DNA of 63,812 nucleotides, filler included, from Octopus bimaculoides (taxonomy: Eukaryota): NCBI RefSeq assembly GCF_001194135.2. It is 8 parts of 8 records of this genome, joined end to end, with 100 filler letters (N's around TTAATTAATTAA, not from the genome) between each part and the next. Parts side by side here need not be neighbours in the genome. Positions count along the whole stretch, not along the records: positions 24,495 to 42,982 come from NC_068989.1; 7 more parts are not named here. One strand, 5' to 3'. Position numbers and translations under genes: made by a program. Shown piece by piece: positions 41,214-41,302 of this stretch. Each line of letters opens with the position of its first letter. Within the stretch, counting starts at the first letter, position 1. The notes below the pieces were generated by a model, which worked only from the letters and a program-made list of their open reading frames with translations, did not search any database and was not told the DNA's origin.

Positions 41214-41302
41214 ATTCCTACATATGTTTCAAAATATATGTACACTCTACTCCAAAGAAGTAAGAGCTGCTAGAATTGCACATAAATTCATCTTCAGGGA
41301 AC
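41214..41302 (-). ncRNA. Type I hammerhead ribozyme motif (Penelope-associated)
   Basis: GTTCC-CTGAAGA-[long stem II]-GAAACATATGTA^GGAAT; stem I 5 bp, palindromic stem III ACATATGT, GUA cleavage triplet. Confidence 0.7.

What the first reader, a model, noticed from the sequence alone, without database searches (positions are those of the whole stretch)
41214..41302. Apparently intact hammerhead ribozyme, sense-oriented, about 140 nt upstream of the lectin exon acceptor
Minus strand: stem I GUUCC/GGAAU, core CUGAAGA, a 13-position stem II (two G-U pairs, one U-U mismatch, U-U at the base) capped by a second hairpin, GAAA, 8-nt palindromic stem III ACAUAUGU, cleavage after GUA. It ends a Penelope element (GIY-YIG at 42144-42690). 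Established: PLE terminal repeats encode type I hammerheads, often active as dimers. Inference: on the lectin pre-mRNA strand it could cut the intron near the branch-point region and affect splicing or output of the host gene. A 26-N gap lies between it and the exon.
Basis: partly seen in the sequence, partly recalled or inferred. Interest (0 to 1): 0.72.

Follow-up and report, generated by a model that had tools for sequence, protein, structure and literature searches.

The report
Retrotransposon hammerhead motif in a lectin intron
The hammerhead ribozyme motif is real and belongs to a Penelope-like retrotransposon family with a few hundred copies, but this lone, slightly decayed copy in a lectin-gene intron shows no sign of cutting RNA or affecting the host gene, so it is an ordinary case of a known kind.

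Summary
The motif is present on the minus strand as described, at 41305-41211. It has an intact core (CUGAAGA...GAAA), an 8-bp stem I, a 60-nt helix II, the palindrome ACAUAUGU as helix III, and cleavage after A17 (41219/41218). My descriptor found it once in the piece and never in 400 shuffles. It lies in a roughly 290-nt repeat (41175-41466) with a few hundred copies. Across those copies the core is nearly invariant and N7 varies freely. Most common stem variants keep or restore pairing. The layout is hammerhead, then a ~36-nt tail, then (TA)n. A related Penelope-like element from another genome has the same layout. An endonuclease remnant of that protein family lies upstream.

Three things count against "intact". 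Rfam reports no hammerhead. The G10.1-C11.1 pair is missing. This copy carries a U.U mismatch where about 60% of copies have A-U. Helix III is only 2 bp in a monomer, and no partner copy lies within 18 kb. RNA from paralogous copies runs unbroken across the cleavage site. This locus itself is not seen in RNA.

Verdict: a relic of a known kind of retrotransposon ribozyme. An effect on lectin splicing is unsupported.

The parts
41298..41305 (-). Stem I, 5' strand UUGGUUCC
   Evidence: It pairs with 41218-41211 (8 bp, two G.U). The only family variant at 5% or more is 41302 G>A (~20%), which turns a G.U into A-U.
41291..41297 (-). Catalytic box C3 U4 G5 A6 N7 G8 A9 = CUGAAGA
   Evidence: Across ~350-600 reads from paralogous copies, only N7 (41293) varies strongly: C in ~60% of DNA reads and U in the expressed copy. 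G8 changes to A in ~5%. The other five positions show no variant at 5% or more.
41231..41290 (-). Helix II, 60 nt. Proximal 13 positions are 41290-41278 against 41243-41231; the distal hairpin is 41277-41244.
   Evidence: The base is U.U then G.U, so there is no G10.1-C11.1. The family majority has A at 41285 (this copy's U.U becomes A-U) and C at 41242 (G.U becomes G-C). The distal part differs between subfamilies but still forms a hairpin (loose end at 41240).
41228..41230 (-). G12 A13 A14
   Evidence: No variant at 5% or more across copies.
41220..41227 (-). Helix III, palindrome ACAUAUGU (A15.1 to U16.1). It is 2 bp plus an AUAU loop in a monomer, and 8 bp between two copies.
   Evidence: The only variant is 41223 A>G (~45%), which stays compatible as G.U in the dimer.
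41218..41219 (-). Predicted cleavage site: after A17 (41219), before G1.1 (41218)
   Evidence: Position follows from hammerhead numbering. No RNA ends or depth dip here in three RNA runs, which sample paralogous copies.
41211..41218 (-). Stem I, 3' strand GGAAUUAA
   Evidence: No variant at 5% or more across copies.
41175..41210 (-). 3' tail of the element (~36 nt), between the hammerhead and the (TA)n target
   Evidence: Family homology runs to about 41175 (loose end at 41203). Locus L007 has the same hammerhead, ~30-nt tail, (TA)n layout. A tail is a PLE signature (PMC8557442, PMC11167929).
41175..41466 (-). The repeat copy as a whole: about 290 nt, the 3' part of a PLE-type element
   Evidence: DNA read depth is 350-650 over the hammerhead against about 1-1.6 on single-copy flanks, falling stepwise toward 41466. 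Most copies continue upstream of 41466 with a sequence that is absent from the window.
41085..41162 (.). (TA)n microsatellite with a 26-N assembly gap (41133-41158); likely insertion target
   Evidence: (TA)n is the target reported for almost all Hydra-clade PLE families (PMC8557442, section 11).
40912..41071 (-). Host exon: acceptor AG at 41073-41072, donor GT at 40911-40910; encodes the N-terminal part of a C-type lectin-like domain
   Evidence: RNA depth is confined to 40912-41071 in X35 and X36. Best matches among solved structures are snake-venom C-type lectin-like chains, E=0.006. No Pfam hit for the 54-aa piece alone.
42085..42470 (-). Remnant of a PLE C-terminal endonuclease domain, with a premature stop at 42146-42144
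   Evidence: phmmer found 1644 relatives, best E=1.4e-25. Alignment A1 conserves Y..YVG..R..F..T.LSK.IW.LK..W.I..Y..C.LC..E..N, and similarity continues past the stop as RCQHWRKH. Full-length relatives carry an RT (YRDD box, weak RVT_1) and a CNCRx5C linker.
42684..42870 (+). SINE with a (CA)n tail that bounds the endonuclease remnant; not part of the element
   Evidence: Six more copies in the piece. Read depth is in the thousands.

Best explanation
41175-41466 on the minus strand is a 5'-truncated copy of the 3' end of a Penelope-like retroelement family, or of a non-autonomous derivative of one. It inserted at a (TA)n microsatellite inside an intron of a gene that has a C-type lectin-like exon, and it lies in the gene's sense orientation.

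The family carries a type I hammerhead motif about 36 nt from its 3' end. The motif has the full catalytic core, a long helix II, and a short palindromic helix III that becomes stable only when two copies pair. That is the architecture described for PLE hammerheads. Its selected role, whatever it is exactly, lies in the element's own RNA life cycle: processing or handling of multimeric element transcripts, possibly with the element's protein. That role is inferred from the literature, not shown here.

At this locus the motif is a solitary passenger. It has no tandem partner. Its helix II is weaker than the family majority. It lacks the G10.1-C11.1 pair. I therefore expect self-cleavage of the lectin pre-mRNA to be absent or very inefficient, with no regulatory role for the host gene.

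Shown here: the motif, its copy number, its pattern of variation, the layout, and the orientation. Inferred: low activity at this locus, and the life-cycle function.
For: - Motif and significance: (one hit; 0 of 400 shuffles).
- Dimer fold.
- Repeat family: DNA read depth is 350-650 over the hammerhead against about 1-1.6 on single-copy flanks. The family is also present in three other coded organisms.
- Variation fits a hammerhead. N7 is A, C or U, while C3, U4, G5, A6, A9, G12-A14, A15.1, U16.1 and A17 show no variant at 5% or more. Changes at 41285, 41242 and 41302 convert a mismatch or wobble into a Watson-Crick pair, and 41223 stays compatible as G.U. Variable sites number 3 of 34 in core plus stem I plus helix III, against 34 of 139 overall (P=0.01).
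- The family-majority sequence folds better than this copy: -23.7 against -18.7 kcal/mol as a constrained hammerhead, and -59.4 against -49.4 as a dimer.
- Link to PLEs: the upstream ORF remnant belongs to a family whose full-length members have an RT plus a C-terminal endonuclease. One such element (L007) has the same hammerhead, ~30-nt tail, (TA)n layout, and Rfam recognises its hammerhead (22.2 bits, E=0.0013). An expressed paralogous copy carries an inverted 31-nt tail (joint 41190/41309), as described for PLE insertions (PMC8557442).
- Low activity is expected. PLE hammerheads cleave poorly in vitro and act as dimers (PMC4209133). The hammerhead of the reconstituted PLE needed the element's protein and left no RNA-seq ends (PMC11167929). 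RNA depth is continuous across 41219/41218, with no pile-up of read ends.
Against: - No Rfam hammerhead hit, even at E<=10. G10.1-C11.1, called highly conserved in PLE hammerheads (PMC4209133), is missing; C at 11.1 occurs in only ~5% of copies.
- One common variant (41278 C>G, ~45%) breaks the outermost listed helix II pair without a matching change in its partner.
- I had per-site read counts only, not aligned copies, so true covariation could not be tested. Mapping at 80% or better favours conserved blocks.
- A U.U at the base of helix II does not rule out activity. The axolotl HHR_Amex2 has one and still cleaves (22% per hour as a monomer, more as a dimer; PMC7229834). 'Inactive here' is therefore an inference.
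- The RNA libraries were unstranded, sampled at about 6%, and did not cover this locus.
- Continuity with the endonuclease remnant is unproven.
Confidence: 0.75

Rival explanations
1. One reading: the motif is an active ribozyme at this locus. It cuts the lectin pre-mRNA in the intron about 146 nt upstream of the acceptor and so lowers or alters splicing and output of the host gene.
For: The catalytic core is intact and in sense orientation. The hammerhead-compatible fold is within 1.6 kcal/mol of the minimum free energy fold. A hammerhead with a U.U at the base of helix II does cleave in axolotl (PMC7229834). In Xenopus, hammerhead-bearing retrozymes are depleted from introns, which hints at a cost of genic insertion (bioRxiv 10.64898/2026.07.22.740005).
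Against: - There is no second copy in the 18 kb available to form the dimer. A monomer has only a 2-bp helix III.
- This copy lost the A-U pair at 41285/41236, and it has G.U where the majority has G-C.
- Transcribed paralogous copies show no read ends or depth dip at the site.
- The locus is not seen in RNA at 99% identity or better. The exon is only weakly expressed, so nothing could be measured at this locus.
- PLE hammerheads are weak in vitro (PMC4209133), and one needed the element's protein (PMC11167929).
- From my own knowledge, not checked here: cutting an intron with a hammerhead need not block splicing, because the exons stay tethered to the polymerase.
Confidence: 0.06
2. The motif is a chance look-alike. 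The conserved block near the element's 3' end is kept for another reason, such as recognition by the reverse transcriptase or internal initiation of reverse transcription, and is not a ribozyme at all.
For: No Rfam hit. The folding energy is not unusual (z=-1.14). G10.1-C11.1 is missing. In the reconstituted PLE, hammerhead mutants still inserted in vitro and reverse transcription initiated internally near the tail (PMC11167929), so the 3' region has functions other than cleavage.
Against: No hit in 400 shuffles. Within the 7-nt box, the only freely varying position is N7. Stem variants are mostly pairing-compatible. A hammerhead that Rfam does recognise sits at the same place in a related element.
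Confidence: 0.1
3. It is a unit of a non-LTR retrozyme: a tandem hammerhead repeat that is transcribed, self-cleaved and circularised into small circular RNAs.
For: The family is a short, AT-rich repeat carrying a type I hammerhead, it is transcribed from some copies, and animal retrozymes are thought to derive from PLE terminal regions (PMC7229834; bioRxiv 10.64898/2026.07.22.740005).
Against: DNA reads show no head-to-tail ('goes back') joints over the repeat, and RNA reads show none either. The only recurrent joint is an inverted one. Copies look dispersed and 5'-truncated rather than tandem.
Confidence: 0.05

Closest known systems
Minimal type I hammerheads of Penelope-like elements (Cervera and De la Pena 2014, PMC4209133)
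   Same: Type I topology with a complete catalytic core. Helix II is longer than usual, and there may be an extra nucleotide after A9. Helix III is very short with a palindromic sequence, so two copies form the active fold. There are many copies per genome, falling into consensus families. The motif sits near the end of the element.
   Different: There is no G10.1-C11.1 pair; the base of helix II is U.U then G.U. Helix II is far longer, at 12-13 bp plus a distal hairpin (60 nt in all), against 7-8 bp. Stem I can reach 8 bp. The motif escapes the Rfam models entirely.
Hydra-clade Penelope-like elements (Craig et al. 2021, PMC8557442, section 11)
   Same: The upstream ORF remnant and its relatives share a C-terminal endonuclease without the CCHH motif, with CxxC before the conserved E and CxH after the conserved N. 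Full-length relatives have a CxCX5C linker. Insertion is at (TA)n, and a hammerhead lies near the 3' end. Mollusca are among the reported hosts.
   Different: The window holds only a degenerate endonuclease remnant with a premature stop and no RT. About 780 nt separate it from the hammerhead, against about 90 nt in locus L007. No phylogenetic placement was done.
Axolotl HHR_Amex2 and other retrozyme hammerheads (Cervera and de la Pena 2020, PMC7229834)
   Same: Type I hammerhead with a U.U mismatch at the base of helix II, and a 2-bp helix III capped by a tetraloop. It is more active as a dimer.
   Different: Those sit in 330-350-bp tandem repeats and yield circular RNAs. Here there are no tandem joints and no circular junctions.
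Conserved intronic hammerheads of amniotes (Rfam HH9, HH10)
   Different: Those are single-copy, orthologously conserved and stable as monomers. This one is one of a few hundred repeat copies, is built for dimers, and gets no HH9 or HH10 hit.

Membership tests
Hammerhead ribozyme, type I | Conserved core: C3 U4 G5 A6 N7 G8 A9, G12 A13 A14, A15.1-U16.1, and H17 (not G) at the cleavage site | tested here: met
   CUGAAGA at 41297-41291, GAA at 41230-41228, A15.1 at 41227, U16.1 at 41220, A17 at 41219.
Hammerhead ribozyme, type I | Three helices around the core, with helix I open-ended | tested here: met
   Stem I has 8 bp and helix II has 11 of 13 positions paired. Helix III is 2 bp in a monomer and 8 bp in a dimer. 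The hammerhead-constrained fold is -18.7 against a minimum of -20.3 kcal/mol.
Hammerhead ribozyme, type I | G10.1-C11.1 (purine-pyrimidine) pair closing helix II at the core | tested here: not met
   U41290 opposite U41231, then G.U. C at 11.1 occurs in only ~5% of family copies.
Hammerhead ribozyme, type I | Match to a curated covariance model (Rfam RF00163, RF00008, RF02275-7) | tested here: not met
   No hammerhead hit at E<=1 in 18 kb or at E<=10 in 191 nt. As a control, the hammerhead of the related element in L007 scores 22.2 bits, E=0.0013, which is still below the gathering score of 34.
Hammerhead ribozyme, type I | Site-specific self-cleavage | not testable with these tools
   RNA-seq of paralogous copies shows no read ends at 41219/41218. 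Those libraries do not capture cleavage ends specifically, and the locus itself is not covered.
PLE-associated minimal hammerhead (PMC4209133) | Large families of copies per genome, with variation compatible with the structure | tested here: met
   A few hundred copies. N7 varies freely. Changes at 41285, 41242 and 41302 improve pairing, and 41223 is compatible. Variable sites are depleted in core, stem I and helix III (P=0.01). This rests on per-site counts, not an alignment.
PLE-associated minimal hammerhead (PMC4209133) | Extra nucleotide between A9 and 10.1 | tested here: inconclusive
   U41290 could be that nucleotide, with G41289 as 10.1 pairing to a U. The other register puts U.U at 10.1/11.1. 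Both give the same number of pairs.
PLE-associated minimal hammerhead (PMC4209133) | Palindromic 15.2-16.2 and loop 3, allowing a dimer | tested here: met
   ACAUAUGU is a perfect palindrome. Cofolding gives an intermolecular 8-bp helix III.
PLE-associated minimal hammerhead (PMC4209133) | Location in the terminal repeat or 3' end of a PLE | tested here: inconclusive
   For: the hammerhead, tail, (TA)n layout matches L007, and a PLE endonuclease remnant lies upstream on the same strand. Against: copy number dips between the two, and most copies diverge at 41466.
Hydra-clade Penelope-like element (PMC8557442) | C-terminal GIY-YIG-type endonuclease lacking CCHH, with CxxC, E, N and CxH motifs | tested here: met
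   CPLCNLE, then N, then (after the stop) RCQH, aligned with relatives. No Pfam GIY-YIG hit for the window ORF. A 'faint' GIY-YIG hit is on record for a neighbouring gene in L007.
Hydra-clade Penelope-like element (PMC8557442) | Reverse transcriptase and CxCX5C linker upstream of the endonuclease | tested here: not met
   Absent from the window copy, where the ORF degenerates and a SINE starts at 42684. Present in relatives P0163 and P0233: a YRDD box, weak RVT_1 at E=4.7e-5, and CNCRx5C.
Hydra-clade Penelope-like element (PMC8557442) | Phylogenetic placement within the clade | not tested
Non-LTR retrozyme (PMC7229834) | Head-to-tail tandem repeats, and circular RNA junctions at the cleavage site | tested here: not met
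   No 'goes back' joints in DNA or in RNA.

The most novel reading that the evidence does not exclude
The family could be an unrecognised hammerhead variant: a 60-nt branched helix II, no G10.1-C11.1, and invisible to Rfam. It might be active in vivo, perhaps with the element's protein or a chaperone. In that case the sense-oriented intronic copies among the few hundred in this genome, including this one, would measurably cut host pre-mRNAs and act as cis-attenuators of genes such as this lectin-like one.
Probability: 0.05. Interest if true: 0.6.

Novelty: new member of a known kind. Interest (0 to 1): 0.2.

Why it matters
Hammerheads at the ends of Penelope-like elements have been known since 2014, and their role is still debated, so one more intronic copy adds little. 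Two points have modest value. First, this family shows that curated covariance models miss a whole hammerhead family with an extended helix II, so counts of hammerheads in cephalopod genomes are probably too low. Second, it links a hammerhead, tail, (TA)n layout to a Hydra-like PLE endonuclease family in this genome. If the motif did cleave host introns, it would be a natural test of how intron cleavage affects splicing, but nothing here points that way.

Tried and rejected
- Rfam at E-value thresholds, on 18 kb and then on 191 nt: no hammerhead. The many miRNA 'hits' are microsatellite artefacts.
- Word-index protein search with the window ORF: no hit at E<=0.001. Pfam gave no credible hit. 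Only the exhaustive phmmer search found the family.
- I tried to fetch other genomic copies through the closest relative, P0001. The contigs are about 1.2 kb, come from another organism, and share no DNA similarity. No alignment of copies could be built, so no covariation test or covariance model was attempted.
- I looked in the window for the sequence that most family copies carry upstream of 41466: absent. The simple picture of one continuous element interrupted by an insertion was therefore not confirmed.
- Contigs of other species did not bridge from unique flank into the repeat, so orthology of the insertion could not be decided.
- Retrozyme or tandem arrangement: rejected, as no head-to-tail joints were found.
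- Several read laying and run-search calls failed as busy and were repeated.
- The species could not be checked because run labels are coded.

Full report
**The observation.** On the minus strand, 41305-41211 reads UUGGUUCC-CUGAAGA-(60 nt)-GAA-ACAUAUGU-A-GGAAUUAA.
- Stem I can be extended to 8 bp (41305-41298 with 41218-41211, two G.U pairs).
- The 60 nt between A9 and G12 form a helix with 13 proximal positions: U.U at the base, then G.U, A-U, A-U, U-A, U.U, U-A, A-U, U-A, G-C, U-A, G.U, C-G. A distal hairpin caps it.
- Helix III is the palindrome ACAUAUGU. Within one molecule it gives only A15.1-U16.1 and C-G around an AUAU loop.
- The cleavage site is after A17, between 41219 and 41218.

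**Is it more than chance?** A descriptor of my own required CUGANGA, a helix II base with 4 of 5 positions paired (with or without one extra nucleotide), GAAA, a palindromic helix III, H17, and a fully paired 5-bp stem I. It finds this one site in the 16.4 kb of real sequence on both strands. It finds none in 400 dinucleotide-preserving shuffles.

The hammerhead-compatible monomer fold costs 1.6 kcal/mol over the minimum free energy fold. Two copies cofold into the classical double hammerhead with an intermolecular 8-bp helix III, at -49.4 against 2 x -20.3 kcal/mol.

Against that, Rfam reports no hammerhead at E<=1 in the piece or at E<=10 in a 191-nt window. The folding energy of the 89-mer is not unusual (z=-1.14).

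**It is part of a repeat family.** Raw genomic reads from two runs were laid at 80% identity or better. They reach a depth of 350-650 over the hammerhead, against about 1-1.6 over the neighbouring exon and intron. That corresponds to a few hundred copies.
- Read in minus-strand orientation, depth falls in steps upstream: about half at 41305-41345, about a quarter to 41460, and about 1-3% beyond 41470. This is the profile of 5'-truncated retroelement copies.
- Downstream, homology runs to about 41175. The (TA)n tract and the 26-N gap follow.
- Most copies continue upstream of 41466 with a sequence that is not in the window (loose-end consensus; search). A handful of copies do share this copy's upstream sequence (depth 3-15; a contig over 41439-41510 at about five-fold depth).
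- The family is also present in three other coded organisms.

**How the copies vary.** The read tables list every site where 5% or more of reads differ.
- In the CUGANGA box the only strongly variable position is N7 (41293). It is A in this copy, C in about 60% of copies, and U in the expressed paralogous copy. G8 changes in about 5%. The other five positions do not vary.
- G12, A13, A14, A15.1, U16.1, A17 and the whole 3' strand of stem I show no variant at 5% or more.
- 41285 is A in about 60% of copies, which turns this copy's internal U.U into A-U.
- 41242 is C in about 87%, turning G.U into G-C.
- 41302 is A in about 20%, turning G.U into A-U in stem I.
- 41223 is G in about 45%, which is a G.U in the dimer helix III.
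- One common change, 41278 C>G (about 45%), breaks the outermost listed pair.
- The distal part of helix II differs between subfamilies, but the alternative version is itself a perfect 9-bp hairpin (loose end at 41240).
- Variable sites number 3 of 34 in core plus stem I plus helix III, against 34 of 139 overall (hypergeometric P=0.01).
- The family-majority sequence folds better than this copy: -23.7 against -18.7 kcal/mol as a hammerhead, and -59.4 against -49.4 as a dimer.

These are per-site counts, not an alignment, so linked covariation could not be tested.

**Link to Penelope-like elements.** The ORF at 42581-42147 has no credible Pfam hit and no word-index homologue. An exhaustive phmmer search finds 1644 relatives, the best at 1.4e-25.
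- In alignment A1 it matches the C-terminal domain of proteins that also carry an RT (YRDD box, weak RVT_1), the FLDV and SNHPP motifs, the HTH_animal domain and a CNCRx5C linker.
- The conserved pattern is Y..YIG..R..F..T.LSK.IW.LK..W.I..Y..CxLC..E..N..CRH. This fits the description of the Hydra clade of PLEs: no CCHH, CxxC and CxH on either side of E and N, a CxCX5C linker, insertion into (TA)n, and canonical hammerheads (PMC8557442, section 11).
- The window copy is a remnant. It has a premature stop at 42146-42144, with similarity continuing after it (RCQHWRKH). It has no RT, and a SINE starts at 42684.
- In a related element from another genome (L007), the ORF stop is followed after about 90 nt by a type I hammerhead, then a ~30-nt tail and (TA)n, with inverted copies. 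Rfam recognises that hammerhead at 22.2 bits, E=0.0013, when given 96 nt.
- The window shows the same order: hammerhead, ~36-nt tail, (TA)n.
- An expressed paralogous copy has an inverted 31-nt tail at its 5' end (joint 41190/41309), which is a PLE signature (PMC8557442, PMC11167929).

Whether the endonuclease remnant and the hammerhead segment belong to one insertion is open. Copy number between them is about ten-fold lower than over either.

**Host gene.** RNA reads cover 40912-41071 with sharp edges in two of three runs, and no reads fall in the flanking intron. The splice signals and reading frame are on the minus strand. The 54-aa peptide has no Pfam hit on its own. Its best matches among solved structures are snake-venom C-type lectin-like chains (E=0.006). 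The 'lectin' label is therefore weakly supported, and the sense orientation is supported.

**Does it cut?** Three RNA runs were laid at 85% identity or better.
- No read was 99% or more identical to this locus, so all the signal comes from paralogous copies.
- Depth is continuous across 41219/41218, and no excess of read ends is reported.
- The libraries are unstranded and about 6% sampled, so this is weak negative evidence.

The structure points the same way. The monomer has a 2-bp helix III. No partner copy lies within the 18 kb available. There is no G10.1-C11.1 pair. This copy has one more mismatch than the family majority.

The literature also agrees. PLE hammerheads cleave poorly in vitro and mainly as dimers (PMC4209133). 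In the only reconstituted PLE, the hammerhead needed the element's protein, was dispensable for insertion in vitro, and left no RNA-seq ends (PMC11167929). On the other side, a U.U at the base of helix II does not abolish activity in axolotl (PMC7229834).

**Conclusion.** It is a member of a known kind with an unusually long helix II and a non-canonical helix II base, which is enough to escape Rfam. At this locus it is most likely an inert passenger in an intron. The suggested effect on lectin splicing is not supported by anything I could measure, but it cannot be excluded without cleavage assays or end-specific RNA libraries.

Noticed in passing
window 42684-42870 (+); further copies at 39679-39497, 27479-27674, 28572-28693, 29317-29397, 28234-28063, 30857-31031: A SINE-like repeat of about 185 bp ending in a (CA)n tail occurs at least seven times in the 18-kb piece, and read depth is in the thousands.
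   Followed up: partly
window 33488-33174 (-): An open frame encodes a PAN/apple domain (Pfam PAN_1, E=1.9e-6) on the same strand as the lectin-like exon. It may be a further exon of the same gene.
   Followed up: partly
window 36601-36092 (-): Remnant of a mariner-type transposase split over two frames (Pfam Transposase_1, E=1.3e-17).
   Followed up: partly
window 35235-34882 (-): An open frame contains a YVDD box followed by ...FLSFVKSFHP.... It looks like the end of a reverse transcriptase and resembles the FLDV/SNHPP region of the PLE relatives. It has no Pfam hit, so its family was not determined.
   Followed up: partly
window 41190/41309 (joint seen in RNA reads of paralogous copies): One or a few transcribed copies consist only of the hammerhead plus tail (about 150 nt), preceded by an inverted 31-nt copy of the tail. 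About 40-90 reads per run show this. About half of the DNA copies also end near 41305-41315, just upstream of stem I.
   Followed up: partly
L007 2374-2415 (-), and 4835-4885, 5027-5075 (+): The related PLE locus holds several hammerheads. One has a 10-nt palindromic helix III (CUGAUGA...GAAACAGUACUGUC; weak Rfam HH9 hit, E=0.016). The others are canonical copies flanking a (TA)n in inverted orientation, and one of these has G12 mutated to C.
   Followed up: partly
window 26504-26693, 29428-30145, 36993-37219, 38252-39184, 41133-41158 and two 10-N runs: The piece contains seven assembly gaps, mostly next to microsatellites, so distances and the completeness of the gene model in this region are uncertain. 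The many Rfam miRNA 'hits' all fall on (TG/TA)n-type simple repeats.
   Followed up: no
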